DNA of 64,000 bases from Paragordius varius (taxonomy: Eukaryota > Animalia > Nematomorpha), in NCBI GenBank assembly GCA_964247055.1, contig OZ176050.1:6324001-6388000 (forward strand). Direction: 5' to 3'. The notes beneath the pieces were generated by a model, which saw only the letters and a list, made by a program, of their open reading frames with translations, did no database searches and was not told the DNA's origin. Position numbers and translations under genes: made by a program. Shown here one piece after another: positions 31,701-64,000 of the stretch; position 1 is the stretch's first letter; the number at the start of each line of letters is the position of its first letter.

Positions 31701-34700
31701 ACCCCCCCCCCCCCCATTAAATTCTTTCGACTCTATTATATATCTATTCACTTAAATAACACACTAGTTTAGTTATTTAACTGAATGAATTAACTTTAAA
31801 TTCTAAAACTATAAAAAAATAGCTAAAATATTTAAAATAAATCAATGAATTATTTATTAGGTTGAATGTTACACACAAACATACAGAGACGGAGAGTAAA
31901 TGGAATAAACTTCAAAGATGTCAAATGAAAATCCCTTTTACCAAAATTTTTAATTATTTAAATGAGCATGTCCTTTTTTTGATTGTGTATGGTCTTGGCT
32001 TAGTATTTTCAAAAAAATTTGCACATAATTTATCTGCTTTTTAGGATTTTTAGTTTAAATAGTAAAATGACACTTGACAGTTCTATTAATTGAAAAAAAA
32101 GCCTTTCATCAAAAAATTCAATGGAACAATTTATGAACCTATTATTTTAATTATGGAATGTTTTTTTAGCAATTAAGATAGGGAGAATAATAAATTTTGA
32201 AAAATTTTGGTATATTGCCTTAAAATGCTAAAAACATGCATTCGATTGCAACCAAATAATATACCATTTACAATTCAAATTCACCCTTGAACAATTCAAA
32301 TTCACCCTAAAAATAAATTATGAAATTTCAGTCTAATATCTCATCATTAAAATTAATTATATTTTTATGGCAAAGTTTATTCTTATTTTTTTGATTACAT
32401 ACAAAATTTCTTCTATTATTATAAAAATGTATAGGTAATATTTAATCTTAAAAAGCACATAATTTATTTTAGGGTGAATTTTAATTGTTCGAGGATGAAT
32501 TTGAATTGTTCGAAGATAAATTTAAACTGTAAATGGTATAATATGTTTTATATGATTTGTGTAGCATGTCCATACAACACATATAAACACTCTCACGGTA
32601 ATTATGAATGTCAATCCTGTCCGCCCAATAGTGAATCAAGCAGAGACAATCACAGAGACTTTCCAACTGTCATGTGCAACTGCAAAGCCGGGTTTTACAG
32701 ACCCGCTTCTAAATTTTATGCAGACACGGCTTGTCAAACCCCTCCCCCACCAGTTAAAAATTTAACGGTTCAACATTTGGATTCGAGTGAAATTATACTT
32801 GAATGGTTTGACTCTACTGCATCGATCAAACAACAAAATGATGGACCAGCTAAAATGAATAGCAGCAGTATTACGAATAATGAGGATTTATCTCTTCTTA
32901 CAGAACCGCATCTTTTCCCTCTCCAGTATCGCGTAACATGCGATGTATGTCCGTTTAACGTTGAGTAAGTCACTATATTTTAAAAAAATACTATATTTTT
33001 ATCAAATAAATTTTAGCTATAAATGGACCTCTTAAATTAATATTTTTTATATGAAAAGATATATACCGGACAGTGAAAACTTGAATGAAACATCGGTTAA
33101 TATTAAAAATTTAAATCCTGGCACAATCTATACATTCAATGTGTACAGTGAAAATGTCATATCAAGCATTGCTGGTTTAGCTAATCATGCAAGCATTACT
33201 ATGCAAACCAAATTTTATCGTAATTTACATTACAATAACCTTATTTTTGATAGATTATAATTTGAATTCTCGTAAAATCTAATATATTCAAAATTTGATA
33301 AAAGATGTCTGAAAAACTAATAATGTTTAAAACAAAAAAATTATTTTTTAGCCAAATTTGGACGCTCTTTGTTGCCTTTGTTTTATTATATAGTGCTATA
33401 TAACAATGAAATATGTTATGATAATTTGAACCACAACACTTTTTTGTGATAATTCCACGACACAAATATTTATTGGGTTTATTTTTAGTACCAATTTTAA
33501 TAACCGATACACGAATCAATAAAATCGGAACTGATTTCGTACAAATGGATTGGAGGATAGATGATGATGGATATCCCGACAATCAAACAATGGGCGTACG
33601 TTTTCAAATATATTATGAGCTGCTTATTACTGATGCTCAACAAAACGCCATACTTAATGTTCAAAATAATGGGGTGGTGTCTTACAAAGAAGTGGACACC
33701 CTTTTAACCACCACTGAATTAAATGGCCTCAAACCCGATTCTCGTTACAAGATTAAAGTAAATTAATTATCATTTCGAGAAAAAAAATAATTTATGCAAT
33801 AAATGATCAATAGTTTTAATATTTTTTTTCTATTTATAAAATTAATTTATAATTTTTATTAAGATACGTGCATTGACAAATGATGCATTTGGTGCATATT
33901 CCGAACCTGTGATATTCAAGACGCTGCCTTCCTCATCTTACGTATCTAATCCCGAAAGTAATTAATCCCTTTTTCCATTAACATTACATATTAATTTTCA
34001 CATAATTGTGAGTGTCTTGATTCGTAAAATCCCAAATGAATTAGTAATATAATTGATATTATATATCAACATTGTTTTAGTTTGTGTTTCCATATAATTG
34101 TCTAGATTTTAATCAATACCTTTTTTTTTCATACAAAACTTGACTTTTAGTGTAAAAATTGGCCTCAATATTGTATAAATATTTATTAGGCATTTTTGTT
34201 TGTCGATATTGAAATTCTGAAGGCCTGACGGTATAGTAGGTAGGGCGCAGGATTTTTACACTATGTGTGTGGAGTCGCAGAGTTTCAAGTTAGAAACTAC
34301 GCAATTTTTCCATCATCACTGCCTATAAGCTCTGGGCAGGCGAGTGTTAAAGCTTTCACAAGTCCGGATACAATTAAGTCCTTACCCTTTAATAAAAAGG
34401 AAAAAGAGACTCTAAATGTATATTTATTTGTTTTTTATTGTCGATATTAAAATTATAGGTTCTGTTTCAAACACTTTTGAAAAAACCGATAATAATCGAG
34501 ATAACATTACGAATATAGACACGGATTATGTAAACGATGTTGAAAATAATGCGGAAGCTAAGCAATCCCAAATTGGCCTAATTGTAGCGCGTTGTTTTAT
34601 AGTCCTTATATCTTTGCTCGGGATAATATCATTAACGGCGTATCTAGTTAAAAGGTAATTTCTTTTTCTCCAACTTTTTATGTATTAATGAGCCCCATGA

Positions 34701-37700
34701 TATATATTAGTTACATAAATATATTTATTATCGCATAATTAGGCGTAATAAAAAATGCCAAGGGAAATCTACGAGTGATTGTGATTCTTTGGAAGTTAAA
34801 ACGGGCCCAGAAGGTAAAATGAGTGATTTATGACTGCATACAATGTTGTAATTATAATTATATCCATATAAATGCGCATTCATTATGGCTATTCCTTTTG
34901 CTTTTAATTGTACGCTTTGCTTAATGCTTATTGCTTGCTTATTTATAATTACTACTAACACATCAAAAACATTTATATAGTTATGACACCATTATTTCCA
35001 CCTCCAATTTTACCACCGAGCGCATTTAACACTTTAGTCGCTTCTCAACAACCTTATGGGCATCACATACTACCCTTTTACAATGGCTTAGCCCCTCGGA
35101 ATGATTATATTATACATGCATCACACAATGAGAATAATACCAACACGCATGTTTATGAAGAAGAAAGAGATAGTATATATTATGGTGGTATGACAAACCA
35201 AAAGTCCAACACAGTCATAGATGGAAATCTCATGAATTACAATAGGACAGATATGAGCCTCAACCAAGAAATCTTGTCCACTAATGGAGAACAGAAACAA
35301 TGTTCAAGGCCTTATTTGACTAGTGCCATTCCTGGACAAATATTGCATCCTTACCAACAAACTTCAAATCCGCAAGAAAATCCTTATTACATGGCCGCCT
35401 CAATCCAACATAATGCTTTGCCCCCGCTTCCCCTATTCCCTTCCCACTCTCATCCATTTTATGGAACTGATTCTACCAATCACCAAATGTTGGATTACAA
35501 CAACAGATATTATGCTGTTGACAATTTGGATAACCAAAACTCTCAACCTCGAATATCCACATACTATTCGAGTTTAGAGGATGAAAGTATGACTTTAGCG
35601 GCGCACCTTAATAACATGGCGGCACACAAACGTAATAGTAAATACATTCATGCTAATCAAGTTATTGATCCACTTACAAATCAACATCATTTTATCCATT
35701 TTTTGGGGATGGAACGTGAAATAACTACAGCTACTGATGAAAGAATGTCAAATTTTGTCGCCCCAATGCATAATCAAATGGCTGATTTTGGGGCGGCAAC
35801 ATCTACGCTAAAACCTTCACTCGATTCAGGGTTTGGGAGTCAACATTCCGAACCTACAGGCCAAAAGCTGGAAAATCTTAAAGATGACCAACTTAATTGT
35901 CATAATTTGGTTACCACTAATTTGGACAATAAATCGATTAACGATGACTCGAAAAATTATCCATACCTAAACGATAATAGTTGTGTGAATGGCTTACCAC
36001 CTCTAAACAATTTTAATACAAATAATAACAATAATAATAATAATAATGGGAAGGATGATTTGAATCAATGTTATATAAAATATGCATTTAACAACACTAA
36101 TGTGTCTGACTCTAATCAGGCCGTATCACGCATAGATAATATTAATGGCTTTCATAACACTAACAAAGATGCGCTTGCTATATTTATTGATAATAAGGCT
36201 AAAACTAACCCAATAGATATATCACACACGATGATAGGTATTAAACGTTTTAAATATATTAGTTTTTTATTTCGGTCATTTAAATTAGTCTAAATAATAT
36301 ATATATTTCCAGGTAAAGGAAAACATTACTATCGAATGTTTTATGGGGCCAACAGGTATATCCAAGATCATCATAACAAAAAATCCAAAAATTCGCAGGT
36401 AATTGTTGCACTCAACAATTTTTTTTCTTAATACTTTTTTATACATATATAGTGGCGTTATTAAATTCCTTTAACGTTTATACATTTAGAATTCAAATTT
36501 TGGGACCTTTGAGCATCACCCAAGATTACGATCGGGAACTTGTAATGGGGCGAACAAAAGTAGTCTAAGACGTTCCTCTTGTTTGTTTGTGGCACCGAGT
36601 TTTAGCCGATCAGCCAATTCTCGCGACAGTCACACCTATGAAGAACCAGCTGTCATTCAAAACATGGCCATTCTACAATCATCTTCTATTCAAAATTATC
36701 CGGTACAGCTTAGTAAATCGAAACTTTTATATCTTGCAAAAAATTATGTGATATCGTTGCCAAGAACCGATCGAAATTATAAAAAATGAATAATGTAGAG
36801 GGTCGTTTCATACATATATTTTAAGCGATATCTAATGTTTGTATAATTATGCTAAAATGTCAAATATTTAATATGTCTGTTTCTGGGTATTTTTATTATC
36901 TTAATCACAAATTCTGCTCTTATTTTTTATCTTAAAGAGTTAAATTTTAAACATTACTATGTTAATATATATATTCATCCAATAACTTTTATATGGGTTA
37001 TGATGGGATTCGTCATATAACATTTTTTATTTTGATTAAAGGGTTTTGGTCAAATGGAAGCTATGTTCAAACAAATCGATCCACAAGTTGACGAATGTCG
37101 CATCTTATCAAATAGTCATGTATTGCTAAAGAAGGGAACATTTCTAAATGTTTATCGTGCTATTATGTGCAGTAACGTGGAAAGTAATGATATTAGAAAT
37201 ATGTCCTATTTTTGTGAAGCTTAAATCCTTTATATAAACCATTTTTATCATTTTTATTCTTGCCGTTTTAGGTGATGCCAATTCTAACCATAGCAATATG
37301 ATAAACCCAATAAAACGTATGGGAAACATTTTGAGTGATTTGAAATCTAGCACGGAATCAAATCATCAAACATCATTAGACAAAACGGGGTCTGAACAGA
37401 CGAATTCCAAAACAACAGGAACCGGTTTAACTAATGTTTGTGTTAAAACATTTATGATTAACACATTATCACCACCAGCAACAGGAGATAAAATACTGAA
37501 AAATTTGATTAAATTTGTCAACAAAGCCTTGACTTTGCAACACATTGCTAAATGTTTGAATAATGGCACGAAACAAAAAGAAACTAACAAAAAATGCGAT
37601 AATTCATTTATGTCCCAATCAGAGGAACAAAATTATTGCAAACATTTGATACGTTTTGTAGGTGTTTACCAAAAAAATTGCTTCATGCCAACATTGACGC

Positions 37701-40244
37701 ATAATTTTACCATTATAACGGAATTTTGTGAGAATGGTTCTCTCGAATCTTTTTTAAAGGTACAACTTATTTCTTACTTTATTTAAAATTTGTACATTCC
37801 TTTGAGTTGACTTTTTTTATTTTGAAAGGACATTTTTTAAAGTAAATAATCTCTGAACTAATTAGTTTTTTTAAATAAATTTTAAAAATTAGTCGTGAAA
37901 ATTCCTATTTTTAATTACCTTAATAAATAATATTTATATTAATTTGCATAGCACAATGAATACAAATTAACGCTAAACCAATTGTTGGAACTGTGTGCCG
38001 GAATTGCTAAAGGGATGGAAAAATTACATGAAATAGTTGGGCCAAATTTTTCCCATATGAAACTTACACCATGGCATGTCTATGTTGACCGACAAATGAA
38101 TTCCAGAATAGCTTCCATAAATGGTAGCATATGTATAATTTTAAACTATTTCTATTGGTAACGAAAATTTTTATAATTGTTTGCTTGAATTAAAAAGATT
38201 TAAACTAAATACAATTTAAAAGGCAATTAAATCAAAAATATAAAAGATAGCAAAACGCTAATTATATTTTTACATATAGCTTTCCATGATAACAATCTCA
38301 AATACATTATCAAAGATAGAGTTGGCTATAAATTAACGCCCCAAACTGGTGGAGCAGAACCAAATAATTATAAAGTAGATTTTTTCAAAATATTTATTGA
38401 AATTTATATATATAACGTACATAATATATACATATTTATTTAAACTTCTAACATTTAAATTATGTTATTACTAGGAAACAATTAAAATACCACTACGTTA
38501 TACTGCACCAGAATGCTTGGTGAACATACTTGAAAATAATATTTCAAATACTCAATTATTTGAGGACGCTCGTTACGGAAATAACCAACAAATGACATCC
38601 AACCCGCTAAAACTATTTAATCAAAGTAGTGATGTATGGAGTTTTGGTGTAATATGTTGGGACATTTTTAATTATTGCACCCTTAAGCCATATGAATTGT
38701 TGAACGGTAATGGACCTGCTTCGCTTGAACCAAAGTGTCTCCTAACTGCACTTTATAATCAATGTTATCGCCTTCCTCCACCTATGGTGAGTACAAAAAA
38801 AACAATAGTTTTAAATTATTTTTTTACAATTAATGTAGATTTATATGGTTTTAATTTATAACAGATGTGCCCGGAAATTTTGCATGAAATTATGATGTAT
38901 TGCTGGCATTTTGATCCAAACAAACGGCCAACATTTAGTCAATTGACTAAATTTTTGTGCGGAATACAAAAAAGAGAAAATCATTATATAATGGATTCAC
39001 CTGCATACATAAAGTAAAAATTTCATAGACCATCAAAAAATATTTTATTAATCCTTTTATACCAAACCATGATTAAATTTTTTTCAAACTTTGTAGAACA
39101 AATTAATGCTTTAAGTCGAATCAAATTTAAACGTAATTTTTTATGCCATAGTTGCTGAATATAACAATTTTATTCATATAACCGTTATTTATTTATAACA
39201 GATCAATTAACTATGATCCTGTCGGTGCTTCATGTTTTTCCGGATTAGAGGATTGGCTAAATTATCTTAAGTTGGGTCGGTATGCGCCTTTGTTTGAAGC
39301 ATTTAATGTTCGAAAATTGGAGGAACTGCTACGTATTACCTCGCATGAATCTATGGGTGAAGCCAGAGGCGTAGAAAGAATCAGACCTCTAACGCCCAAT
39401 CACCATTTATTAAATTTAATAAATTCCATGAGTATAACAAATTTAGCCCATAAAAATAAGCTCTATATGGGTCTCGAAACCATACGACAAAGTCTTGAAC
39501 CATTAGTGATGAAAAATAATCCAGATATGGAATACAATCAATTTTTACCCGTTCTTGCTTCTAATTGGCAAACCATTATAAGTGAATCGATGGTCGTGGA
39601 TTCGACAGCTTCCTTAAAAGACACCATGTTAATGCGTAACAAGCAAATGTCAAAAAAATCACCCGTCAAAAACACAAAAATGAAATCATCAGTCAAGAGC
39701 GGTAAAATAGCCAAGGAAAAGAAAAATAAATCTAATAATTCGCACCAGGAGAATCTAATAGGATTAGGTAAGAGTTAAACTTAATCCTAATACATTTATG
39801 ACAATAGTTTTATTAAAAGAGTGTAATTTCATATTATATAGGATAAAATATTTAATCCAAATTATAGATTCGCCTCCAAACGTAACAAAATCAAACAATT
39901 ATACAATGCCAGAAAGTGGATGCCATATAAATTTAACCATGTCTTTAAACAGTTCCACGGAATCATCAAATGGAACCAATTTTGAGGCAGAAACGATAGA
40001 ATTATCATCATCATCTAATAACAACAGATTACCAAATAATACACATAAAGAAACCGATATATTTAATGGTAGTACAATTAACACATCTTCCCAAGCTGCA
40101 ATGATGGTTTATCCCACTGTGATCCAAAACAATTATCATAAAAATGTCTGTAGTCCACAAAATTCTGATGTAACAAAAGCTACCCAATTATTTTGGCCCA
40201 CGTCTCATGATTCACATACACCTGTTAACGGATATTTAGTCTGA
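19725..40244 (+). CDS. Eph: Eph receptor-family protein with catalytically degenerate kinase domain (~2,080 aa). Exons: 19725-19773 (uncertain), 20603-20688, 24150-24770, 25035-25479, 32565-32964, 33059-33219, 33489-33757, 33864-33957, 34459-34654, 34743-34813, 34981-36237, 36313-36398, 36490-36702, 37042-37183, 37272-37759, 37952-38123, 38280-38374, 38475-38786, 38865-39013, 39202-39767, 39868-40244
   Basis: Complete Eph domain order: ligand-binding domain (VNLLDT..WLEE..RSYVVCD..DNWLRTP..YSMRDC..CKETF..GFHLAFHDTGACLSLLAVE), sushi/EGF Cys-rich region (CDPGY, CPYNTYK..CQSCPPNS..CNCKAGFYR), two FN3 domains, TM helix, HTYEEP, kinase fold (ITEFCENGSL, KIPLRYTAPE, SDVWSFGV, YRLPPPM, CWHFDPNKRPTFSQL), SAM domain (LEDWLNYLKLGRY) and C-terminal GYLV. 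Splice phases are consistent throughout (6249 nt). The first exon and two donor choices are uncertain. Confidence 0.92.
24104..24127. repeat. (TA)n microsatellite (similar tracts at ~1408-1430, ~8298-8335 and ~20510-20530)
   Basis: Direct reading of the sequence. Confidence 0.9.
32262..32538. mobile_element. 277-bp MITE (family C) with TACCATT termini and 21-bp subterminal repeats
   Basis: TA|TACCATTTACAATTCAAATTCACCCTTGAACAATTCAAATTCACCCTAAA ... inverted copy ending TGTAAATGGTA|TA. Confidence 0.85.
34222..34380 (+). repeat. Possible tRNA-derived SINE head / GC-richer island in an Eph intron
   Basis: GGCCTGACGGTATAGTAGGTAGGGCGCAGGAT resembles a tRNA 5' half with an A-box, and GAGTTTCAAGT is a weak B-box. 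There is no proper cloverleaf and only one copy in the window. Confidence 0.25.
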
Positions 40245-41027
40245 AAACAGACCAAATGTTAATATAGATTGATTGATTACCTTGGAGAGAGGAGAGAGTA
40301 AGTAATGAATGCATAATTTTCCGGTGCTTATATCATTCTCCAATTAAAATGCATATAAAATGTGAATATCACCAAAGTTATTGTGTATGTTAGTGATATA
40401 GTGCCAGATCTCAATCAAAAAGCGTTGATCAATGAGGGTTAAAGGCATCTACAATAACCATTTAATTGATGACAATTTATTTCCAATTGCATTTTATTTA
40501 TGACCAATTTTTTATGTTACAAATATGATATATATATGACAAATTTTTAATGTAAAAAATAAATTAATTAGTAAACAGTTTTATAAGTTGTGTGTGGGCT
40601 AATTATTTCAATCCGTTTTGTATAAATTAGCAGTGGACTTGTCATGCGTCGTGTTTAAGTTTTCAAAAGATGGTCTTATCAGTTTATTTATAAAGGTGAT
40701 AACCATAATTGATTTCGAATAAGGTCACAAGTTTTTCTGAATATTGCTTCAAGATTCTTTTTATGAAGGGAAAAGGAAAGTTTAATCTAGGGTTGGCCCT
40801 TGCCTAAAAGCTAATTAAAAGCGCTATTAAGTTAACCATAAACACCCAGCAAGAGTATGTTTTAATTATTATTATACTATCAAAAAGCATGAATGTTTCA
40901 TGGAATAATTGATTAATTTACGTAAAATATAATTAAAATTATTTATTCATTTTTTTGATCCATAGTTTCTAAATGAAAATAATGAAATACAATAAAAATA
41001 GATTATAAAACAAAAGGAAAAAGTAAA

Positions 41028-41598
41028 CACATCGAAAATTGGGGTATCTAAATACCCCAGATTAAATTTAAATTAAAATTTTTAAAAAACTACTGAAGGA
41101 AGCAGTCCCAATATTAATTGCTTCTATCCTAATAAAAATTATATAAAAAAGCCAAAATATCTAAAGAAAATTTCGTTTTGAAAAAAAGGTTCCATGTCAA
41201 ACTACTCAGACGCCATTTTAAATCTACCAAAATTTTGCAAAATATCGTGTTAATTTGATTCTAACGATAAAATTAAAGCTAATTTTTTTATTTAAATTAC
41301 ATCTAATTTTGCTAGAAATGTAAAAAGTGGATTGTTTTGTATATTTTTCAATTTAGCCAATGCACATATGTTACGTTAACTAAATTTTTACCTTTGGGTT
41401 TTACATTAAAAAAAGAAATATCAAGTATTTTTGAATAAAATTTTTTATATATTTCGGTTTATTAATGTAGGTGCAAAATTTTGCTATGGTTTCGATTCCT
41501 TCCATATTTTTTGAAGTATTTAATTTTAAAAAGGCCTGGGGTATCCAACCACCCCAATTTAAATCGAAGGACTGAAATGAGTGTGTTGTATCCAAGTG
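41028..41598 (+). mobile_element. piggyBac-type MITE (~570 bp), degenerate left end
   Basis: Aligns along its length with 47516-48083 and, inverted, with 51827-52404. Contains GGGGTATCTAAATACCCC and ends ATCCAAGTG|TTAA. Confidence 0.75.
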
Positions 41599-47515: not shown

Positions 47516-48083
47516 CACTTAGATTCAATTTGGGGTATCTAAATACCCCAGAACAATTTAAGTTGGGATTTAAACTACTGAAGGAAACGGTCCTAATTTA
47601 AATTTATGCTTCAATCCAAATATAAATTATATAAATATGCTGAATAAATAAAATTTTGTTTTGAAAAAAAAGTTCCTAGTCAAACTACTTCGACGCCATT
47701 TTATATTACATTTTTGCAAAATGTCGTCTTCATTTAATTTTTAGGGTGAAATAAAGCTAATTTTTTATTTAAACCACATCAAACATTGATAGATAGAAAC
47801 AGAAAAAGCGGTTTATATTGTATTATTTCTCAATTTTATCATTGCACACATGTCACATTGACTAAATTTTTGCCTTTCAGTTTTAGCTTAAAATAAATAA
47901 TATCAAGTATTTTTAAAAATTTTTTTTATATATTTCGGTTTATTAATGTTATATAAGTGCAAAATTTTGCATGGTTTTGTATTCCTTCCATATTTTTAAA
48001 ATTTTTTATTTTAAACAGATCTGGGGTGTCCAATTACCCCAATTTGAATCGAAGGACTAAAATGAATGTGTTGTATCCAAGTG
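47516..48083 (+). mobile_element. piggyBac-type MITE copy
   Basis: CACTTAGATTCAATTTGGGGTATCTAAATACCCCAG ... CTGGGGTGTCCAATTACCCCAATTTGAATCG..ATCCAAGTG. Homologous to the other copies; the TTAA TSD is not preserved on the right. Confidence 0.75.
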
Positions 48084-51810: not shown

Positions 51811-52921
51811 TACCATTTGCCTTTAACACTTGGATACAACACACTCATTTTAGTCCGATTCAAATTGGGGTAGTTGGATACCCCAAGCCTGTTTAAATTA
51901 AAATTCTTTAAAAAATATAGAAGGAATCGAAACCATGGCAAAATTTTGCACTTATCTAACATTAATAAACCGAAATATATAAAAAAATTTATTCAAAAAT
52001 ATTTGATATTACTTTTTTTAAGCTAAAACCGAAAGGTAAAAATTTCGTCAACGTGACATATGTCAAATTGTAAAATTGAAAAATAATACGAAATAAACCG
52101 CTTTTTCTATTTCTATCAATGTTAGATGTAATTTATATAAAAAATTAGCTTTGATTTTACCCTTAAAATTAAATAAAGCGATATTTTGCAAAAATTTTGT
52201 AAAATAAAAATGGCGTCGAAGTAGTTTGAGATGGAGCTTTATTTTCACAACAAAATTTTATCAAGATATTTTGGCATATTTATATAACATTTATCAGGAT
52301 AGAAGCATAAATTTAAATTGGGACCGTTTCCTTCAGTAGTTTTTTAAAAATATTAATTTTAATTTAGTCTGGGGTATTTAGATACCCCAATTTGAATCGA
52401 AGTGTTAAGAGTGTCCTTAAAATCTTCAAGTTGGTCTTTGAACATTTAAAAGTGGTCCATTAACCTTTTAAGTTTGTTAACCATAAATTTTGCATTTATT
52501 ATTTTTTTATCATTTCCTGACTTATTTTTGTTAATTTATTATATGTTTATTCATTTAAAATTAATATTTTTTATTTAAATACCATTTTTTTGTTTCAAAC
52601 TATTTTTATTCAATTTAACTATGATTTAATTATAGATTTTAACATTGTAATTAATAACCGTGAAAACCCATATTTTTATCAATTAGCTGTTGAAATCTTA
52701 TTAAAATTAATATTTTTATTAAAAAAAATATACGGTTTCTGAATGACCAAAGGTTGATTTTGATTTAAAAGTTGGGTTGAATCATGAGAATAGGTTACAA
52801 TCAAATATATTAATACACGGTTTGATTGATAAAAGTCAGAAACAATTTAAAAAAATTAAAAGACTATAATGTTTTCAAGGACCAACTTGAAGTGTAGGAC
52901 ACTCTTGAAGTACAAATGGTA
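51811..52921. mobile_element. MITE family B (TA TSD, TACCATTTG termini, 21-bp subterminal repeats), interrupted by a piggyBac-type MITE
   Basis: TA|TACCATTTGCCTTTAA[insert]GAGTGTCC...GGACACTCTTGAAGTACAAATGGTA|TA. A duplicate of its distal part lies at 58611-59132. Confidence 0.85.
51827..52404 (-). mobile_element. piggyBac-type MITE, 578 bp, intact TTAA TSD
   Basis: TTAA|CACTTGGAT ... ATCGAAGTG|TTAA, with asymmetric subterminal inverted repeats containing GGGGTA-N6-TACCCC hairpins. A partial duplicate lies at 58514-58610. Confidence 0.85.
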
Positions 52922-54146
52922 TAATTAATATATATTTTCATCAGTCATAGTGACCATAAAAATTTTAAGGACCAAAAAATATTTTTCTTGTTTCAAGGGC
53001 CGTGCACCATATAATAGTGATAAATAATTTTAGCTGTATTACACAGTAAGTTATTTATAGCCCAAACATTACAATTAAAAATTAATTAAATATTTTAGGG
53101 CCATAAAAAATAACCTTTAGGGCTGCATGCGCTCAATAGACTGCGGTTAGAGCACCACTGCTATATATCATTGATGCCAATAATTAAGTTTATTTGATAG
53201 GATGATTATCCCTATAAAAGATGGTAGAAAATGGTTGCAAGAGGTTTTCTTGTATACACTCAGTCAAAACAATTAGTGACTGGATTGAAAAGGGCGTAGG
53301 CTAGATTATTTTAATTATTTTTTTTGTATTTTAAGTCGAAATAATTCACCCAACTAATCAATATTTTGCAAAAGTATTATAAATTATTTGAAATAAATTA
53401 GGACTTAACTATTTATAATTAAAAATTATAATCTAAAAGGATTGGTTACTTACGCATTGTTCCAATAATAATAATTCAATAAAATTTATTAATTAAGATG
53501 TCCAACTTAAATTTAATAACAAATTGCTCAAAATATATTCTTACTATAATGCCAAAATTTTTTATACGAATTATACCTTGGTAAAAGGCATCGATCATAA
53601 AATATATTTTTATATAAAATATTAAGAAATCATTTAAATATGGATCACATCTTTTTTGAATTTACCACCCAAAAGCATTAAAATTAATTTAATTTTTGAT
53701 TACATCCACAAGGAAAAACGTCTAATATATAGTTGAGTTTATAACTAGAAATTTTAATTATAAAAGATTTTGATGTAAAAATTGGTTAAATTTTAAAAAC
53801 TGATTTTAACATATGTTACCATTTACAGTTTGATTTAAATTTTAAAATAGAGCATGTGGCTATCCTTAAATGTACCTTGCCTTGCGCAAGTTATAATTTT
53901 TATCTTGATGCAAACAACATTGTCACTTAGGCCACAAGAAAATGAAAAACGAGACATTAAAACCATTAACGGCCTATGGAAATTTTCTATATCCCCGAAT
54001 ATGTCCATTGATAAATGGATAAGTCATGAGACATATATTCCTGTTCCTGCTAGTTATAATGATTTATTTTATGATTCTACTATACGAGATCTTATTGGTG
54101 TAACTTGGTATCAAAAAGACTTTAAAATTACGTCATCATGGAAATC

Positions 54147-54171
54147 GTAAAATTTTAAATATATTATCTAG
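54147..54171 (+). other. Ultrashort 25-nt intron in GUSB copy 1 (equivalent at 60364-60388 in copy 2)
   Basis: TC|GTAAAATTTTAAATATATTATCTAG|A. It contains the in-frame TAA, and removal restores WKS-NLENYKFIINFASVHY. Confidence 0.8.
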
Positions 54172-56497
54172 AAATTTAGAAAATTATAAATTTATAATTA
54201 ATTTTGCCAGTGTCCATTATTTTTCACAAGTTTGGTTAAATAAACAATATTTAGGATCACATGAAGGTGGTCATTTGCCGTTTGAATTTGATGTTACATC
54301 TATTTTAAATACTAAAGGTAATTTTATTTATATTATAACCCCATTTTTGTAACTATGGTCAATTAATTTTATCCGCTTACATATTATGATTCCGATTTTA
54401 ATATCTTTTTTATTATTATAGATATCGATAAAATATACTTATGATTAAGGTTAATGACCGGTTTGACCTTTTATAAATAACCAATCCAATTATTTGAAAA
54501 CATGATTTTTACCAGTTATAATACATGTATAAATCTGTGTAATAAAAATGTAAAATTTTGGCTTTAAGTGAAATTTCTTGTACGCGGTTCATAATTAATT
54601 AGAATCAAAACTCATTCATGCCCAGAGCGTTTCAGAGCCCTTTTCAAATTGCTCGCAGAATTAAGCGCTACTCATTACAAAAGCATATCGTATGAGATAG
54701 TTTTTAGATAATGTATGGGCCCATTTTCATTTAATAATGGTAATAGGCATTTACGAATGTCAAGATTATACCTTTTTGAATAAGTCTTGGTTATCCTAAA
54801 ATCTATTACCTGCTCCCCTAATACTACGATTTTTGTCTAAGGCAGCCATCACCAAAAAATGACGGTCCACATAAAAATATATTGTGCCGTTTCACATATC
54901 AATATAAAATTTAAACCTTAAGCTTGTTTCGACTATAAAGTTTGAATGAGTTTGCAGAAGCACAAAAAGTATCTTGACTTTCATCTAATCAAACCAGACA
55001 TTTGATAAGAATTCAAAAAAGCCTATTAAAAAAACCGCCCAAAGATTTCTTTTACAATTATTATAAATTACAACTCTAAATTTGAATGATTTGTCGATCA
55101 GTTTCTTTTTTGATGCTAAACATCAGTAAATCTCATATAAACCCTTGTATCGTTTTGAAACAATTTTTAACGTATTATAGATTTGATCATGGCCGGTTTA
55201 TTTTATTTATGCATAGAATTATTTTGGCTTTTTTAATTATGGAGAGAAAACTAAGTAATTAATATCGAATTATAATACTTTTTTGCCGTTTGATTTCGGA
55301 TTACACTAGACAACAAATTTTTCTGCCACTCGAGTTTTTTGCATTTTCTGATATTTAGCATCATTCTAACAGTAAATCTGAAATAAAAATTAATACTCGA
55401 TGAAAGAATTTTGTATAATTTGATTTTTTTGATTATGCGCCCTCTTTATCAAAATTTTACTAAAAATTGTTTTTCTTTAAAAATATACTAGTAATTCCCA
55501 TTTGTAATATATGATTCGAAAGAGTATTAAAAACTCTATAAAATGCATACTAATATGTATTACATCGACAATTAATATTGAACACAAAGAGCGACAAACG
55601 CGCGAAGCGAGAGCACTTTTTTTTAATTATTATAATTTTAAAACTAATGGATGAAAATAGCTCAAACTTTATTTAGAGGGAGATGAATGTCCAAAAAAGA
55701 TAACACAAGAAAGTTTTTTTTGATTAAAACATTTTTTATTGCTTTTATGTCACTCAAAACAGCCATTTTTAAGTTTTTTGTTTTTTAAAAATTAGCATGT
55801 CATCAATATTAATAAATTTTCTTTACAAGGCTGATAATTTCGAAATTTAAAAGATAAAAACAAAGTTTAAGGTATTTTTGATATTTTATAGCCATTATGT
55901 AATAAATTTACAGTTATAACTATGCATTTTAGTATCCACGAGGTAAAATATTTATGATAATAATAATTTTTATTTAAAAAGCAAAACAAAAGCTTTTTCA
56001 AACATTTTTTTAAATTAAATACTAATATAACCCTAATAATTATATTATGATAATTTATATGATTTTCAAATTAGTTTGTCTGTGAAAATTCTTGACTTAT
56101 TTAAGGATTGAAAATTTCGACCATTTAAATCCAAATAACTTTTACATCCGGTTGATTTAAATGACTTACTACCATTTAAAAGATTCAGTTTTTTGCGCTC
56201 TTTCGAATGATATAAAATACATGGCTTCATATCTAAAACTTTAAATTTTCGAAATTTCGAGTCTAATGTTAAATCGGGGCCAAAAATTATCGATAAACTC
56301 TAATATAAAAAATTCTTCCATGCTAGACCAATTTTCTTTTCAGATATACTAATTATGTACTTTAATGAAATAAATTTTAAATTTACAAGAATGGCAGTTA
56401 AAAAAAGTTAAAATTTGTTGTCTAGTGTTATAAAGATGTAATGATTAATTTGTGGAATTTAGATTTTGATAAATATACACATTGCATAGAATTGCCT

Positions 56498-56532
56498 TGC
56501 GAGTCGCATGCGGCTGCAGTGTGTCCCGCTAG
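56498..56532 (+). mobile_element. Helitron-like 3' terminus (duplicate at 62791-62825)
   Basis: GC-rich hairpin TGCGAGTCGC-AT-GCGGCTGCA, a 10-nt spacer, then CTAG followed by T. The 5' end was not identified. Confidence 0.5.
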
Positions 56533-59500
56533 TATAATCCTACAAATAAAAATGGAATAATATAATACATATATTGAAAATTATTTTAAAAGCAAGGCTT
56601 CTAACCCGAACCTCCTGATATTATAAACAGTATCGAAATCCACCTACTTCTGTCTAAAAAACACCAGTTTCCCCTTTTTTATTTTTCAAAAAACAATCAG
56701 ATTCTGTTCCTAACCGTCCTGTGATTATCATAGTCCAACGCCTGGTTAAAATTTTTTTAGTATCTTATAATTTAAACTGATAGCGGGCCATAAATTCCTA
56801 GGCCAGCGGCATGCGGTTTGTATTTTAGGTTTTATAGAGACCAATGTCATTAAATTTATTATCGATTGATAATTACTAAATGTTTTAACTATTCGTCTTT
56901 CGATTGTACTGTTTCTCTTAGATTTGCAGTTATCGTATAACCAATCATCGTTTTTGCCAAGAAATCATCACACCGATTTAACATTGAATGTAGCTGAATT
57001 AAGATGGGTTTTTATTTTTGTTTTCCCATTGTATCTTCTTTTTTTAATGTCGCCTCAATAAGGTGGTCATTTGTTTAGTAGTGGGCCATTTTGAAGGGCC
57101 TCTCAGGTAATGAGCTTATTGTGGAGTATTGGATATCGTTTGGTGGTCTACGGTTTTTTGACTCTAAACAAGGGGTCAGGCACTGATTTTTTGGAGATCG
57201 AATATTAGCAAAATTACAAAGTTTGGGATTATGGCAACAATTAATTTTTATGTTTGCCTATTTTGATTACCTGTAGATTTTAAAAAGAAAACTGAATCGG
57301 AACCATATGATTAAAAACATTATAGCTGAAGTGCGAGACAAGATATAATATAAATGATGCAACGTTGGTTTAGGTTTTTTCGCCATAACATTAATATACA
57401 GCCGTCATCATGTTTTTCCAGCTAATTTGATAGCTAAATTATAAAATCGCTATAATTATATAATCTTTACGACTCTCTTGCGATCAAAACTCTATAAATT
57501 CTGTAGGTATCTTGGTATTTAAATAACATTTATAAGTATTTTACTTTTCTATTTTTTAAATTCTAAACAATACCCAAATATTATTCAGGAATGAATATTT
57601 TGACAGTTGCAGTTAACAATACATTGACAGAATTCACGATCCCTCAAGCTCAGTATACTCACAAATCTGGACAAAATCATGTATAATCTAATATAATTTT
57701 TAGAAAAAACCGCAAATTATATATGAAAATCTATTTTATTTTAACCCATTAAATATTATATATTGATTGCTACACTGATAATATTTATTTTAAGCCATAA
57801 AATACTTTATTAAACCTTTTTTAATATTTAACATTTTACAATGTTAAATATTTAATTTATTGTTTATTTTTGCAACATGGCCTCATTTTGTGTAATTACA
57901 CCAAAAATTATTCAAATCTAATTTTAGAAAAAATAGGTAACTGTCCATAAAATTTGTTATTTTTGGTAGTTTTTTGACAAATATTTTTTATATAATTATA
58001 GAAAAAGGCTAGAGTTGCCTATACACCCAGTGGGTTCACGGAAGATGTCTTGTTATTCGATTTTTTTAATTATGCCGGAATTCACCGTGATGTCACTTTA
58101 CAAAGGATACCCAAGACACATATTAAGGATGTAAATATCAGTTCCAACATGATTTCTTTTTATCCATCCAGTGCATCAATATCGATTTCCATTGATGTTG
58201 AAAACGATAATGGTAAAACATATTTTAGGCATTTATGTTATTAAAGACAATTTATTTAATGAAAATTTTGGAAATAGACCCGATGAACATTGTATGTCAA
58301 GTATACCTGTACGAAGACCCTGAGAAATCTATATACCCCCAAAAAATTATATCGAAATCAATATTAGATCCTATCTACCATGGACAGATTATAAATTTTA
58401 AAGGTGTTATAACTCTTGCTGATAATGTTAAACTTTGGTGGCCGTATACTATGGAACCTAAGGATGAAAAACCAGGATTTCAATATATGGCAAAGATTAT
58501 TCTAAAACAACACTAAATTTAAATTGGGACCGTTTCCTTCAGTAGTTTTTTAAAAATATTAATTTTAATTTAGTCTGGGGTATTTAGATACTCCAATTTG
58601 AATCGAAGTGTTAAGAGTGTCCTTAAAATCTTCAAGTTGGTCTTTGAACATTTAAAAGTGGTCCATTAACTTTTTAAGTTTGGATTTAACCATAAATTTT
58701 GCATTTATTAATTTTTTATCATTTTCTGACTTAATTTTCTTGATTTATTATATGTTTATTCATTTAAAATTAATATTTTTTATTTAAACCAATTTTTTAT
58801 ATCAAACTATTTTTATTCAATTTAACTATGATTTAATTTTAGATTTTAACTAAAAATTGTAATTAATAACCGCGAAAACCTGTATTTTTATCAATTAGCT
58901 GTTGAAATCTTATTAAAATTAATATTTTTATTAAAAAAATATACGGTTTCTGAATGATCAAAGGTTGATTTTGATTCAAAAGTTGGGTAAAATCATGAGA
59001 ATAGGTTACAATAAAATATATTAATACACGGTTTGATTGATAAAAGTCAGAAACTTTAAAAAAAAATTAAAGGACTATAATGTTTTCAAGGACCAACTTG
59101 AAGTGTAGGACACTCTTGAAGTACAAATGGTATATTTAATATATATTTTCATCAGTCATAGTCACCATAAAAATTTTAAGGACCAAAAAATATTTTTCTT
59201 GTTTCAAGGGCCGTGCACCATATAATAGTGATAAATAATTTTAGCTGTATTACACAGTAAGTTATTTATAGCCCAAACATTACAATTAAAAATAAATTAA
59301 ATATTATAGGGCCATAAAAAATAACCTTTAGGGCTGCATGCGCTCAATAGACTGCGGTTAGAGCACCACTGCTATATATCATTGATGCCAATATAATTAA
59401 GTTTATTTGATAGGATGATTATCCCCATAAAAGATGGTAGAAAATGGTTGCAAGAGGTTTTCTTGTATACACTCAGTCAAAACAATTAGTGACTGGATTG

Positions 59501-60070
59501 AAAAGGGCGTAGGCTAGATTATTTTAATTATTTTTTTTTGTATTTTAAGTCAAAATAATTCACCCAACTAATCAATATTTTGCAAAAGTATTATAAATTA
59601 TTTGAAATAAATTAGGACTTAACTATTTATAATTAAAAATTATAATCTAAAAGGATTGGTTACTTACGCATTGTTCCAATAATAATAATTCAATAAAATT
59701 TATTAATTAAGATGTCCAACTTAAATTTAATAACAAATTGCTCAAAATATATTCTTACTATAATTAAGCCAAAATTTTTTATACGAATTATACCTTGGTA
59801 AAAGGCATCGATCATAAAATATATTCTTATATAAAATATTAAGAAATCATTTAAATATGGATCACATCTTTTTTGAATTTACCACCCAAAAGCATTAAAA
59901 TTAATTTAATTTTTGACTACATCCACAAGGAAAAACGTCTAATATATAGTTGAGTTTATAACTAGAAATTTTAATTATAAAAGATTTTGATGTAAAAATT
60001 GGTTAAATTTTAAAAACTGATTTTAACATATGTTACCATTTACAGTTTGATTTAAATTTTAAAATAGAGC

Positions 60071-63000
60071 ATGTGGCTATCCTTAAATGTACCTTGCCTT
60101 GCGCAAGTTATAATTTTTATCTTGATGCAAACAACATTGTCACTTAGGCCACAAGAAAATGAAAAACGAGACATTAAAACCATTAACGGCCTATGGAAAT
60201 TTTCTATATCCCCGAATATGTCCATTGATAAATGGATAAGTCATGAGACATATATTCCTGTTCCTGCTAGTTATAATGATTTATTTTATGATTCTACTAT
60301 ACGAGATCTTATTGGTGTAACTTGGTATCAAAAAGACTTTAAAATTACGTCATCATGGAAATCGTAAAATTTTGAATACATTATCTAGAAATTTAGAAAA
60401 TTTTAAATTTATTATTAATTTTGCCAGTGTCCATTATTTTTCACAAGTTTGGTTAAATAAACAATATTTAGGATCACATGAAGGTGGTCATTTGCCGTTT
60501 GAATTTGATGTTACATCTATTTTAAATACTAAAGGTAATTGTATTTATATTAATTAGTAACCTCATTTTTGTAACTATGGTCAATTAATATTATCCGCTT
60601 ACATATTATGATTTCGATTTTGATATCTTAAATAACTACTCACACTCAGTATATTGTTAATTTTAAATTAAAAGTCGTCTATATTAAATATGAAAAAGTT
60701 TTTTTATTATAGATAGCGTTAACAAATACTTATGATTAAGGTTAGTGACCGGTTTGACCTTTTATAAATAACCACTCCAATTATTTGAAAACATGATAAT
60801 TATAAAAACATGTATAAAATCAATGTAATAAAAATTTAAAATTTTGGCTTTAAGTGAAATTTCTTGTACGCGGTTCATATTTAATTAGAATCGAAACTCA
60901 TTCATGCCCAGAGCTTTTCAGAGCCTTTTTCGAATTGCTCGCAGAATTAAGCGCTGCTCATGTTATTACAAAAGCATATCGTGTGAGGTAGTTTTTTGAT
61001 AATGTGTGGGCCCATTTCGATTTAATAATAGTAATATGCATTTACGAATGCCAAGATTTAACCCTTTTTTGATTTAAGTCTTGGTTATCCTAAATCTATT
61101 ACCTGGTCCTCTAATACTACGATTTTTGTCTAAGGCAGCCATCACCAAAAAATGACGGTCCACATAAAAATATATTGTGCCGCCTCACATATCAATATAA
61201 AATTTAAACCTTAAGCTTGTTTCGACTATAAAGTTTGAATGAGTTTGCAGAAGCACAAAAAGTATCTTGACTTTCATCTAATCAAACCAGACATTTGATA
61301 AGAATTCAAAAAAGCCTATTAAAAAAACCGCCCAAAGATTTCTTTTACAATTATTATAAATTACAACTCTAAATTTGAATGATTTGTCGATCAGTTTCTT
61401 TTTTGATGCTAAACATCAGTAAATCTCATATAAACCCTTGTATCGTTTTGAAACAATTTTTAACGTATTATAGATTTGATCATGGCCGGTTTATTTTATT
61501 TATGCATAGAATTATTTTGGCTTTTTTAATTATGGAGAGAAAACTAAGTAATTAATATCGAATTATAATACTTTTTTGCCGTTTGATTTCGGATTACACT
61601 AGACAACAAATTTTTCTGCCACTCGAGTTTTTTGCATTTTCTGATATTTAGCATCATTCTAACAGTAAATCTGAAATAAAAATTAATACTCGATGAAAGA
61701 ATTTTGTATAATTTGATTTTTTTGATTATGCGCCCTCTTTATCAAAATTTTACTAAAAATTGTATTTCTTTAAAAATATACTAGTAATTCCCATTTGTAA
61801 TATATGATTCGAAAGAGTATTAAAAACTCTATAAAATGCATACTAATATGTATTACATCGACAATTAATATTGAACACAAAGAGCGACAAACGCGCGAAG
61901 CGAGAGCACTTTTTTTTAATTATTATAATTTTAAAACTAATGGATGAAAATAGCTCAAACTTTATTTAGAGGGAGATGAATGTCCAAAAAAGATAACACA
62001 AGAAAGTTTTTTTTGATTAAAACATTTTTTATTGCTTTTATGTCACTCAAAACAGCCATTTTTAAGTTTTTTGTTTTTTAAAAATTAGCATGTCATCAAT
62101 ATTAATAAATTTTCTTTACAAGGCTGATAATTTCGAAATTTAAAAGATAAAAACAAAGTTTAAGGTATTTTTGATATTTTATAGCCATTATGTAATAAAT
62201 TTACAGTTATAACTATGCATTTTAGTATCCACGAGGTAAAATATTTATGATAATAATAATTTTTATTTAAAAAGCAAAACAAAAGCTTTTTCAAACATTT
62301 TTTTAGATTAAATACTAATATAACCCTAATAATTATATTATGATAATTTATATGATTTTCAAATTAGTTTGTCTGTGAAAATTCTTGACTTATTTAAGGA
62401 TTGAAAATTTCGACCATTTAAATCCAAATAACTTTTACATCCGGTTGATTTAAATGACTTACTACCATTTAAAAGATTCAGTTTTTTGCGCTCTTTCGAA
62501 TGATATAAAATACATGGCTTCATATCTAAAACTTTAAATTTTCGAAATTTCGAGTCTAATGTTAAATCGGGGCCAAAAATTATCGATAAACTCTAATATA
62601 AAAAATTCTTCCATGCTAGACCAATTTTCTTTTCAGATATACTAATTATGTACTTTAATGAAATAAATTTTAAATTTACAAGAATGGCAGTTAAAAAAAG
62701 TTAAAATTTGTTGTCTAGTGTTATAAAGATGTAATGATTAATTTGTGGAATTTAGATTTTGATAAATATACACATTGCATAGAATTGCCTTGCGAGTCGC
62801 ATGCGGCTGCAGTGTGTCCCGCTAGTATAATCCTACAAATAAAAATGGAATAATATAATACATATATTGAAAATTATTTTAAAAGCAAGGCTTCTAACCC
62901 GAACCTCCTGATATTATAAACAGTATCGAAATCCACCTACTTCTGTCTAAAAAACACCAGTTTCCCCTTTTTTATTTTTCAAAAAACAATCAGATTCTGT

Positions 63001-63973
63001 TCCTAACCGTCCTGTGATTATCATAGTCCAACGCCTGGTTAAAATTTTTTTAGTATCTTATAATTTAAACTGATAGCGGGCCATAAATTCCTAGGCCAGC
63101 GGCATGCGGTTTGTATTTTAGGTTTTATAGAGACCAATGTCATTAAATTTATTATCGATTGATAATTACTAAATGTTTTAACTATTCGTCTTTCGATTGT
63201 ACTGTTTCTCTTAGATTTGCAGTTATCGTATAACCAATCATCGTTTTTGCCAAGAAATCATCACACCGATTTAACATTGAATGTAGCTGAATTAAGATGG
63301 GTTTTTATTTTTGTTTTCCCATTGTATCTTCTTTTTTTAATGTCGCCTCAATAAGGTGGTCATTTGTTTAGTAGTGGGCCATTTTGAAGGGCCTCTCAGG
63401 TAATGAGCTTATTGTGGAGTATTGGATATCGTTTGGTGGTCTACGGTTTTTTGACTCTAAACAAGGGGTCAGGCACTGATTTTTTGGAGATCGAATATTA
63501 GCAAAATTACAAAGTTTGGGATTATGGCAACAATTAATTTTTATGTTTGCCTATTTTGATTACCTGTAGATTTTAAAAAGAAAACTGAATCGGAACCATA
63601 TGATTAAAAACATTATAGCTGAAGTGCGAGACAAGATATAATATAAATGATGCAACGTTGGTTTAGGTTTTTTCGCCATAACATTAATATACAGCCGTCA
63701 TCATGTTTTTCCAGCTAATTTGATAGCTAAATTATAAAATCGCTATAATTATATAATTTTTACGACTCTCTTGCGATCAAAACTCTATAAATTCTGTAGG
63801 TATCTTGGTATTTAAATAACATTTATAAGTATTTTACTTTTCTATTTTTTAAATTCTAAACAATACCCAAATATTATTCAGGAATGAATATTTTGACAGT
63901 TGCAGTTAACAATACATTGACAGAATTCACGATCCCTCAAGCTCAGTATACTCACAAATCTGGACAAAATCAT
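60071..63973 (+). CDS. GUSB: Beta-glucuronidase (GH2), copy 2, 5' part (exons 60071-60363, 60389-60534, 63882-63973; continues beyond window)
   Basis: Same GH2 N-terminal motifs as copy 1 with intact frames. It is presumed to be the complete gene, but its 3' part lies outside the window. Confidence 0.85.
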
Positions 63974-64000
63974 GTATAATCTAATATAATTTTTAGAAAA

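What the first reader, a model, noticed from the sequence alone, without database searches (positions are those of the whole stretch)
54147..54171. 25-nt micro-intron in GUSB with a built-in natural control from the duplication
Seen: the in-frame TAA after WKS is removed by a 25-nt GT-AG intron. The two tandem copies are identical over the preceding 293-nt exon but differ at 2 of the 25 intron positions (GTAAAATTTTAAATATATTATCTAG vs GTAAAATTTTGAATACATTATCTAG), keeping length, GT and AG. The next differences are one conservative change (Y/F) and one synonymous change. The only competing acceptor (54210, a 64-nt intron) would delete KFIINFAS, which aligns to the core GH2 strand RIVLRFDAVTH / RVVLRIGSAH. 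This is the strongest independent evidence that the micro-intron class is real and not gene-specific.
Basis: partly seen in the sequence, partly recalled or inferred. Interest (0 to 1): 0.78.

Follow-up and report, generated by a model that had tools for sequence, protein, structure and literature searches.

The report
Tiny 25-base intron in GUSB
The beta-glucuronidase gene of this hairworm-like animal can only be read if a 25-base stretch is spliced out, which adds one more case to this genome's unusually tiny introns; the duplicated copy offered as a built-in control is too recent to prove anything.

Summary
A 25-nt GT...AG segment lies at 54147-54171 and a second copy at 60364-60388. The copies differ at 2 of 25 positions, at 0 of 293 in exon 1, and by one Y/F and one synonymous change in exon 2.

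A real phase-2 spliceosomal micro-intron is the best explanation (about 0.85).
- Exon 1 and exon 2 abut on the GH2 N-domain profile (positions 80|82).
- The rest of the gene is intact, with its catalytic motifs.
- The closest relative, Gordionus beta-glucuronidase, has a 55-nt phase-2 intron in the same loop and four further introns at identical codons.
- The same genome's single BiP-type HSP70 gene has a 28-nt GT-AG intron whose flanks abut exactly on BiP residues 91|92.

- The "two GUSB copies" are a head-to-tail duplication of only the 5' part of one gene. The finding lies in the truncated copy.
- The duplication control has no power. The copies differ by 1.4%, and non-coding runs of up to 1452 nt carry no substitution.

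No RNA evidence could be obtained. This scan has already reported the micro-intron class on other DNA of this genome.

The parts
52308..58513 (+). Duplication unit A (6206 nt): upstream region plus exons 1-5 of the beta-glucuronidase gene, cut inside exon 5. A TAA follows directly at 58514-58516.
   Evidence: blastn of the extended window against itself and the junction sequences
58514..64000 (+). Duplication unit B. It runs to 64806, beyond the window, and continues into the only catalytic part of the gene at window-equivalent 65.5-69.7 kb.
53854..54146 (+). Exon 1, copy A: signal peptide and the first half of the GH2 sugar-binding domain. It ends after 2 nt of a Ser codon.
   Evidence: Pfam PF02837 positions 1-80; PDB beta-glucuronidases
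54147..54171 (+). 25-nt GT-AG micro-intron, copy A, phase 2. If retained, it gives TCG then TAA at once.
54172..54317 (+). Exon 2, copy A (ends in phase 1)
   Evidence: Pfam PF02837 positions 82-122; PDB alignments
54318..57588 (+). Intron 2, 3271 nt (GTAATT...TTCAG). Same codon and phase as Gordionus intron 2.
57589..57680 (+). Exon 3 (the LTVAVNNTL strand)
   Evidence: tblastn with the Gordionus protein, 72% identity; sequence
57681..58001 (+). Intron 3, 321 nt
58002..58212 (+). Exon 4 (FDFFNYAGIHR motif)
58213..58277 (+). Intron 4, 65 nt, with donor GTAAAA like the micro-intron
   Evidence: frame arithmetic on the sequence
58278..58513 (+). Exon 5, copy A, truncated by the duplication breakpoint
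60071..60363 (+). Exon 1, copy B (identical to copy A)
60364..60388 (+). 25-nt micro-intron, copy B (two substitutions relative to copy A)
60389..60534 (+). Exon 2, copy B
63882..63973 (+). Exon 3, copy B

Best explanation
Positions 54147-54171, and the twin at 60364-60388, form a genuine U2-type GT-AG spliceosomal intron of 25 nt. It is in phase 2 and is the first intron of the single beta-glucuronidase (GH2) gene of an AT-rich animal whose closest protein match is the hairworm Gordionus. Removing it joins ...SSWKS to NLENYKFIINF..., that is, the conserved Trp to the next beta-strand of the sugar-binding domain. An unspliced message stops at once (TCG TAA), so retention would truncate the protein after Ser98. 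The intron lies inside a recent 6.2-kb tandem duplication of the gene's 5' part. Only the downstream unit (B) is joined to the catalytic exons. The upstream unit (A), where the finding lies, can encode at most a 326-residue N-terminal fragment. Shown here: the sequence, the frames, the homology on both sides, the intact gene, the Gordionus intron and the BiP precedent. Inferred: that the spliceosome actually excises these 25 nt.
For: (1) Exon 1 matches Pfam Glyco_hydro_2_N positions 1-80 in one frame, and exon 2 matches positions 82-122 in the +1 frame. The PDB alignments agree: E. coli GUS 4-81 then 85-122, and human 8-91 then 99-137. (2) Frame 0 stops immediately after WKS, so a +1 shift is required. 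Among 36 frame-restoring GT/GC-AG pairs, only the 25-nt one keeps both the Trp and the strand. (3) A frame-restoring GT-AG in the 46-nt interval allowed by homology occurs by chance at 9% of window positions; a GTAA...TAG pair occurs at 0.4%. (4) The gene downstream of unit B is complete, with 11 exons. It carries WSLANEP, LEYGSE and the N-x-K glucuronide motif, and it is the only GH2 TIM barrel in the genome, which argues against a pseudogene. (5) The Gordionus sp. m RMFG-2023 beta-glucuronidase-like protein is 70-80% identical in the catalytic exons. Its gene has a 55-nt phase-2 intron in the same Trp-to-strand loop and four other introns at the same codon and phase as here. Strongyloides ratti and Laodelphax have no intron in that loop. 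(6) Positive control in the same genome: the only BiP-type gene found among the HSP70 matches is interrupted by a 28-nt GT...AG (L007:447-474). Its flanks map to residues 14-90 and 93-439 of PDB chain 6hab_A, so the junction falls exactly at 91|92. (7) The donor GTAAAA is the same as that of this gene's 65-nt intron 4.
Against: No RNA evidence was found. No protein from this species covering exon 1, exon 2 or BiP exists in the protein collections. The junction lies in a variable loop. The spliced loop is 8 residues, against a mode of 4 and a usual range of 3-7 in 85 homologues, and 21 in Gordionus. Loop length alone therefore does not exclude other joins. The Gordionus intron sits 9 codons further from the Trp, so positional identity cannot be shown. 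Its sequence shows no significant similarity to the 25-mer (p = 0.06-0.2). There is no polypyrimidine tract, and the only branch-site candidate is weak (TTRA at intron positions 9-12). The duplication comparison adds nothing either way.
Confidence: 0.85

Rival explanations
1. The gene carries an inherited frameshift or nonsense lesion, so it is a pseudogene or a gene dying at its 5' end. The 25-mer is never removed, and the GT and AG are there by chance.
For: Frame +1 is open from 54104 through the 25-mer, so a one-base slip would also connect the two homologous segments. A frame-restoring GT-AG arises by chance at 9% of positions. No transcript was seen.
Against: All other exons are intact with canonical splice sites and catalytic motifs, and this is the only GH2 TIM barrel in the genome. 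The chance rate for the fuller GTAA...TAG motif is 0.4%. Gordionus has an intron in this loop in the same phase. The same genome needs a 28-nt excision in its BiP gene.
Confidence: 0.06
2. Splicing happens but uses another pair: donor 54132 with acceptor 54171 (40 nt), or donor 54147 with acceptor 54210 (64 nt).
For: Both pairs restore the frame without a stop in both copies. Lengths of 40 and 64 nt are ordinary for animal introns.
Against: The 40-nt version has a weak donor (GTCATC) and deletes SSWKS, including the Trp found in all 124 homologues aligned there. The 64-nt version deletes 13 residues including the beta-strand aligned to E. coli 85-95 and human 99-109.
Confidence: 0.05
3. Assembly artefact: the two units are two haplotypes laid in tandem, or the frame break is a consensus error.
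For: The units are exactly head to tail and differ by 1.4% plus 14 indel events, a level that could be heterozygosity.
Against: There are no N runs. The join is a clean breakpoint inside exon 5. The same 25-nt interruption, with two substitutions, is present in both units, so a random consensus error is unlikely. A false duplication would change only the 'two copies' part of the story, not the intron.
Confidence: 0.03
4. Programmed +1 ribosomal frameshifting at the TCG TAA site reads through without splicing.
For: A stop in the zero frame next to an open +1 frame is the geometry of known +1 frameshift sites (general knowledge).
Against: It would add 8 residues to a loop that is already long. 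No such site is known in GH2 genes. Splicing explains the same data and has a precedent in this genome.
Confidence: 0.01

Closest known systems
Ultra-short (<30 bp) introns of myxobolid Myxozoa and of Dicyema japonicum (Hadjez et al. 2026, PMC13644364)
   Same: These are animal GT-AG introns of 20-27 bp with AT-rich interiors. Their 5' signal is reduced to about GTA, they lack a polypyrimidine tract, and a few A residues upstream of the AG are the presumed branch site. They were validated by conserved exon junctions, as done here.
   Different: In those lineages the median intron is 22-27 bp, and short introns have short neighbours. Here the 25-nt intron sits next to a 3271-nt intron in the same gene, and most introns checked are ordinary. 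That paper does not mention Nematomorpha in its main text. It had Iso-Seq support; no RNA evidence is available here.
About 25-bp introns of Paramecium and Nyctotherus (PMC5014332, abstract)
   Same: Same length class. The length is not a multiple of 3, and a stop follows on retention.
   Different: Ciliates have only ultra-short introns and use another genetic code. This gene uses the standard code and also has kilobase-sized introns.
Intron 1 of the Gordionus sp. m RMFG-2023 beta-glucuronidase-like gene (XP_065313221; L010:3330-3384)
   Same: Same gene, same loop between the conserved Trp and the next strand, and same phase (2). Both are the first intron. Four other introns of the two genes coincide exactly.
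   Different: It is 55 nt rather than 25. It lies 11 codons after the Trp rather than 2, and the spliced loop is 21 residues rather than 8. There is no significant nucleotide similarity.
28-nt intron in this genome's BiP gene (G000:C4:12482546-12482573)
   Same: GT...AG, AT-rich, begins GTTAAAATTTT (here GTAAAATTTT). Its length is not a multiple of 3, it has an in-frame stop on retention, and it lies near the 5' end of the gene.
   Different: Phase 0. Its flanks are so conserved that the junction is fixed to the residue, which is not possible for the GUSB loop.

Membership tests
U2-type GT-AG spliceosomal intron | GT at the 5' end and AG at the 3' end | tested here: met
   GTAAAA...TCTAG in both copies
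U2-type GT-AG spliceosomal intron | Removal restores one reading frame and joins segments that are adjacent in homologues | tested here: met
   Pfam positions 80|82; PDB alignments; enumeration of all frame-restoring pairs
U2-type GT-AG spliceosomal intron | Excision seen in RNA | not testable with these tools
   No protein or transcript product from this species for exon 1, exon 2 or BiP. Searches with joined exons were left out by rule.
U2-type GT-AG spliceosomal intron | Branch site and polypyrimidine tract | tested here: inconclusive
   The only YTRA-like candidate is TT(A/G)A at intron positions 9-12, and the A/G substitution between copies keeps a purine there. There is no pyrimidine tract (read from the sequence).
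U2-type GT-AG spliceosomal intron | Intron at the corresponding place in a related species | tested here: inconclusive
   Gordionus has a 55-nt phase-2 intron in the same loop, but 9 codons away in a loop of different length. No intron is present there in Strongyloides ratti or Laodelphax.
Ultra-short animal introns of the myxobolid/dicyemid type | Length under 30 nt with a reduced GTA...AG signal | tested here: met
   25 nt, GTA at the 5' end and AG at the 3' end; the definition is from PMC13644364
Ultra-short animal introns of the myxobolid/dicyemid type | Genome-wide shortening: median intron under 30 bp and short neighbouring introns | tested here: not met
   The neighbouring introns in the same gene are 3271, 321 and 65 nt. 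Nearly all junctions in the HSP70 and CCT genes are over 40 nt.
GH2 beta-glucuronidase | Glyco_hydro_2_N plus a GH2 TIM barrel, with the acid/base NEP motif, the nucleophile EYG motif and the N-x-K motif | tested here: met
   PF02837; PF02836 at 133 bits; WSLANEP, LEYGSE and VNRKG in the exon translations
Tandem whole-gene duplicate (two GUSB genes) | Each copy holds a complete coding region | tested here: not met
   There is one TIM-barrel locus in the genome. Unit A ends inside exon 5 and runs directly into unit B.

The most novel reading that the evidence does not exclude
This ecdysozoan, a relative of hairworms, would be a third animal lineage with introns under 30 nt. It would also be the first in which such introns form a minority class, mostly near the 5' ends of genes, living beside kilobase introns in the same gene. 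The GUSB case, set beside a 55-nt phase-2 intron in the same loop of the Gordionus gene, would then be consistent with a micro-intron arising by shrinkage of an ordinary short intron rather than by whole-genome compaction.
Probability: 0.7. Interest if true: 0.7.

Novelty: new variant of a known kind. Interest (0 to 1): 0.5.

Why it matters
Introns under 30 nt were long held to be absent from animals. They have been published for only two parasitic lineages, both with genome-wide intron shrinkage (PMC13644364). A genome that keeps kilobase introns yet splices 25-28-nt ones would show that the animal spliceosome's lower size limit is not tied to genome compaction. There is also a practical cost. 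Standard gene finders and aligners skip such introns, which breaks gene models and may inflate apparent gene loss in these animals. This GUSB case adds one more member, together with a comparison to a related worm's 55-nt intron. It is not the strongest proof of the class; the BiP case found here is stronger.

Tried and rejected
(1) RNA-level support. Word-based protein searches with exon 1, exon 2 and the BiP exon, and the exhaustive search with exon 1, returned no protein from this species.
(2) Joined-exon steps. Searching for the spliced junction, searching with the spliced protein, and folding the domain with and without the 13 residues were all left out.
(3) A window-wide test counting every boundary dinucleotide pair that fuses two long open frames. 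It was uninformative. GT-AG made up 34 of 18410 pairs, about the background rate, because each frame junction yields many shifted pairs.
(4) Nucleotide homology of the 25-mer to the Gordionus exon tail or intron was not significant (p = 0.06-0.2). A tblastn alignment that ran through the stop (NFKYI against EYKYL) is therefore treated as low-complexity chance.
(5) CCT (PF00118) and tubulin scans gave no further junction under 40 nt.
(6) The selection reading of the duplication was rejected because substitutions are clustered.

Full report
**Observation.** The window is AT-rich, at 23-34% G+C. It lies at G000:C1:6324001-6388000 of a 110.6-Mb assembly.
- The 25-nt string beginning GTAAAA and ending TCTAG is at 54147-54171. 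Its variant is at 60364-60388. These are the only two matches, and none occurred in 100 shuffles.
- Exon 1 (ATG at 53854 to 54146, 293 nt) reads in one frame up to ...SSWKS and is then stopped by TAA.
- The next homologous segment, NLENYKFIINFASVHYF..., lies in the +1 frame.

**What the repeat really is.**
- Self-alignment of the window, extended by 10 kb from the genome (L003), shows an exact head-to-tail duplication. Unit A is 52308-58513 and unit B is 58514-64806.
- Each unit holds about 1.5 kb of upstream sequence and five exons: exon 1, the 25-mer, exon 2, a 3271-nt intron, exon 3, a 321-nt intron, exon 4, a 65-nt intron, and part of exon 5.
- The breakpoint lies inside exon 5. Unit A therefore ends ...KQH followed at once by TAA, the first bases of unit B. 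Unit A can encode at most 326 residues.
- The genome has a single GH2 TIM-barrel locus (PF02836, 133 bits), at window-equivalent 67.2-68.0 kb, downstream of unit B.
- This is therefore one beta-glucuronidase gene with a duplicated 5' part, not two genes. The finding's coordinates fall in the truncated unit.

**Is the gene alive?** Guided by the closest relative (see below), the exons after unit B are all present with GT-AG borders and compatible phases. They carry the acid/base motif WSLANEP, the nucleophile motif LEYGSE and the N-x-K motif of glucuronidases. Nothing else in the gene is broken.

**Does a 25-nt excision fit the protein?**
- Exon 1 covers Pfam Glyco_hydro_2_N positions 1-80, and exon 2 covers positions 82-122.
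- On E. coli GUS the two pieces map to residues 4-81 and 85-122. On human GUSB they map to 8-91 and 99-137.
- I listed all 36 GT/GC-AG pairs that restore the frame without a stop. Three lie near the junction:
  - the 25-nt pair;
  - the 64-nt pair, which removes the strand.
- The spliced loop between the Trp and the strand is 8 residues. In 85 homologues the mode is 4 and the usual range is 3-7. The loop is a little long but plausible.
- A frame-restoring GT-AG in the 46-nt interval that homology allows arises by chance at 9% of window positions. A GTAA...TAG pair arises at 0.4%.

**The duplication as a control.**
- The units differ at 87 of 6196 aligned positions (1.4%) and by 14 indel events.
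- Exons show 5 substitutions in 980 nt, against 80 in 5191 nt of non-coding sequence (Fisher p = 0.01). The 25-mer's 2 of 25 against exon 1's 0 of 293 gives p = 0.006.
- These tests assume evenly spread substitutions, and they are not evenly spread. Non-coding runs of 1452, 686, 580 and 542 nt carry none.
- The clean run over exon 1 is 457 nt and starts 154 nt upstream of the ATG.
- About 8.6% of all 25-nt windows carry two or more substitutions.
- Under neutrality, GT and AG would both survive with probability 0.94, and the length with probability 0.95.
- The comparison therefore neither supports nor weakens the intron. It cannot be called the strongest evidence for the class.

**Related species.**
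- The exhaustive protein search with exon 1 found no protein from this species. It did find a clear nearest relative.
- That relative is 40% identical in exon 1 and 70-80% identical in the catalytic exons.
- It is named beta-glucuronidase-like, isoforms X1-X3, of Gordionus sp. m RMFG-2023, a hairworm.
- Its genomic locus (L010) shows exon 1 ending ...SLNN plus two bases of an Ile codon. A 55-nt GTAAGT...GCAG intron follows at L010:3330-3384, and then DHEEKASFKYILRF....
- That is a phase-2 intron in the same Trp-to-strand loop, as here. It lies 11 codons after the Trp rather than 2, and the loop is 21 residues rather than 8.
- Four other introns coincide in codon and phase in the two species: after ...TSK/NTK...NELP...LIG/DRI and ...IPG/TYA.
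- The planthopper Laodelphax and the nematode Strongyloides ratti have no intron in this loop.
- The two worms therefore share an intron in this loop that the two other animals checked lack. This points to a real intron here that is 55 nt in one worm and 25 nt in the other.
- Positional identity cannot be proven, because the loop lengths differ and the intron sequences show no significant similarity.

**Positive control in the same genome.**
- Scanning G000 with the HSP70 profile showed one gene whose first two matches are 16 nt apart, with overlapping profile positions.
- In the fetched locus L007, a 28-nt GT...AG segment (447-474) separates ...DMKYFPYT from IKEKNGKPSIVV....
- On the BiP chain 6hab_A the two pieces map to residues 14-90 and 93-439. 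Their ends meet exactly at 91|92, with about 85% identity downstream.
- It is the only BiP-type gene found among the HSP70 matches, and a chaperone this conserved is unlikely to be a pseudogene. This shows independently that the genome needs sub-30-nt excisions.
- Both micro-introns begin with GT, then (T)AAAATTTT. Neither length is a multiple of three, both give an in-frame stop if retained, and both lie near the 5' end of their gene.
- Most other junctions in the HSP70, tubulin and CCT genes are ordinary.

**Mechanism.**
- Shown: the sequence signals, the frame requirement, the homology on both sides, and the related-species and same-genome precedents.
- Inferred: ordinary U2-type splicing by intron definition. 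The donor C|GTAAAA is shared with this gene's intron 4, the acceptor is TCTAG|A, and the branch adenosine is perhaps A12 in TT(A/G)A. Retention would truncate the protein after Ser98.

**What could not be done.**
- No RNA from this species could be reached.
- There was no junction pattern search, no search with the spliced protein, and no fold with and without the 13 residues.

**Comparison with what is known.**
- Introns under 30 bp in animals are published only for myxobolid myxozoans and Dicyema japonicum. In both, the median intron is 22-27 bp and short introns have short neighbours (PMC13644364). That paper's main text does not mention Nematomorpha.
- The two hairworm genome papers I checked do not mention introns at all.
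- Here the tiny intron sits beside a 3.3-kb one.
- Earlier notes of this scan report the same class (20-32 nt) in other windows of this genome. I used them as leads only. One of them prompted the look at the related worm's gene structure.

**Verdict.** This is a real-looking 25-nt intron (confidence about 0.85) and a further member of a class this scan has already reported. The duplication "control" carries no weight, and the "two copies" are a partial 5' duplication.

Noticed in passing
window 52308-58513 and 58514-64806 (extended coordinates): Substitutions between the two duplication units are strongly clustered. They are dense at 52308-53300 and 54300-54900 and absent over 56013-57465. This may reflect gene conversion between the units or a mosaic origin.
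   Followed up: partly
window 53854-58516: Unit A keeps a promoter-side flank, a signal peptide and five exons. It ends in a stop created by the duplication junction. It could encode a secreted 326-residue fragment (sugar-binding plus Ig-like domain) without the catalytic barrel. Of the 5 exon substitutions between units, 4 are non-synonymous (in 3 codons).
   Followed up: no
G000:C4:12482546-12482573 (L007:447-474): A 28-nt GT-AG intron in the BiP gene, whose flanks meet exactly at BiP residues 91|92. This is a cleaner proof of the micro-intron class than the GUSB case.
   Followed up: yes
L010:3330-3384 (Gordionus sp. m RMFG-2023, OX940783.2): The Gordionus GUSB first intron is 55 nt, phase 2, in the same loop. 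The Gordionus loop is 13 residues longer. Isoform X2 uses an alternative donor inside exon 2 that drops the conserved GGHLPFEFD segment.
   Followed up: partly
window 41036-41598 and 47527-48083: A second, older direct repeat (about 80% identity, spacing about 6.49 kb) upstream of the GUSB duplication. It has no similarity to GUSB and its nature is unknown.
   Followed up: no
window 34000-40300 (+): A receptor-type kinase gene (Pfam PK_Tyr_Ser-Thr, then a SAM domain) with candidate short introns of 30 nt (38835-38864) and 34 nt (39774-39807) between long open frames. The profile coordinates do not abut cleanly at the 30-nt one.
   Followed up: partly
window 346-371 (-): A 26-nt GT...AG between open frames of 121 and 114 codons on the minus strand. 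Neither frame has a Pfam match.
   Followed up: partly
extended window 64571-67500: This genome's GUSB has two introns (after ...DDDDA and after ...GCDKT) inside what is one 231-residue exon in Gordionus.
   Followed up: no
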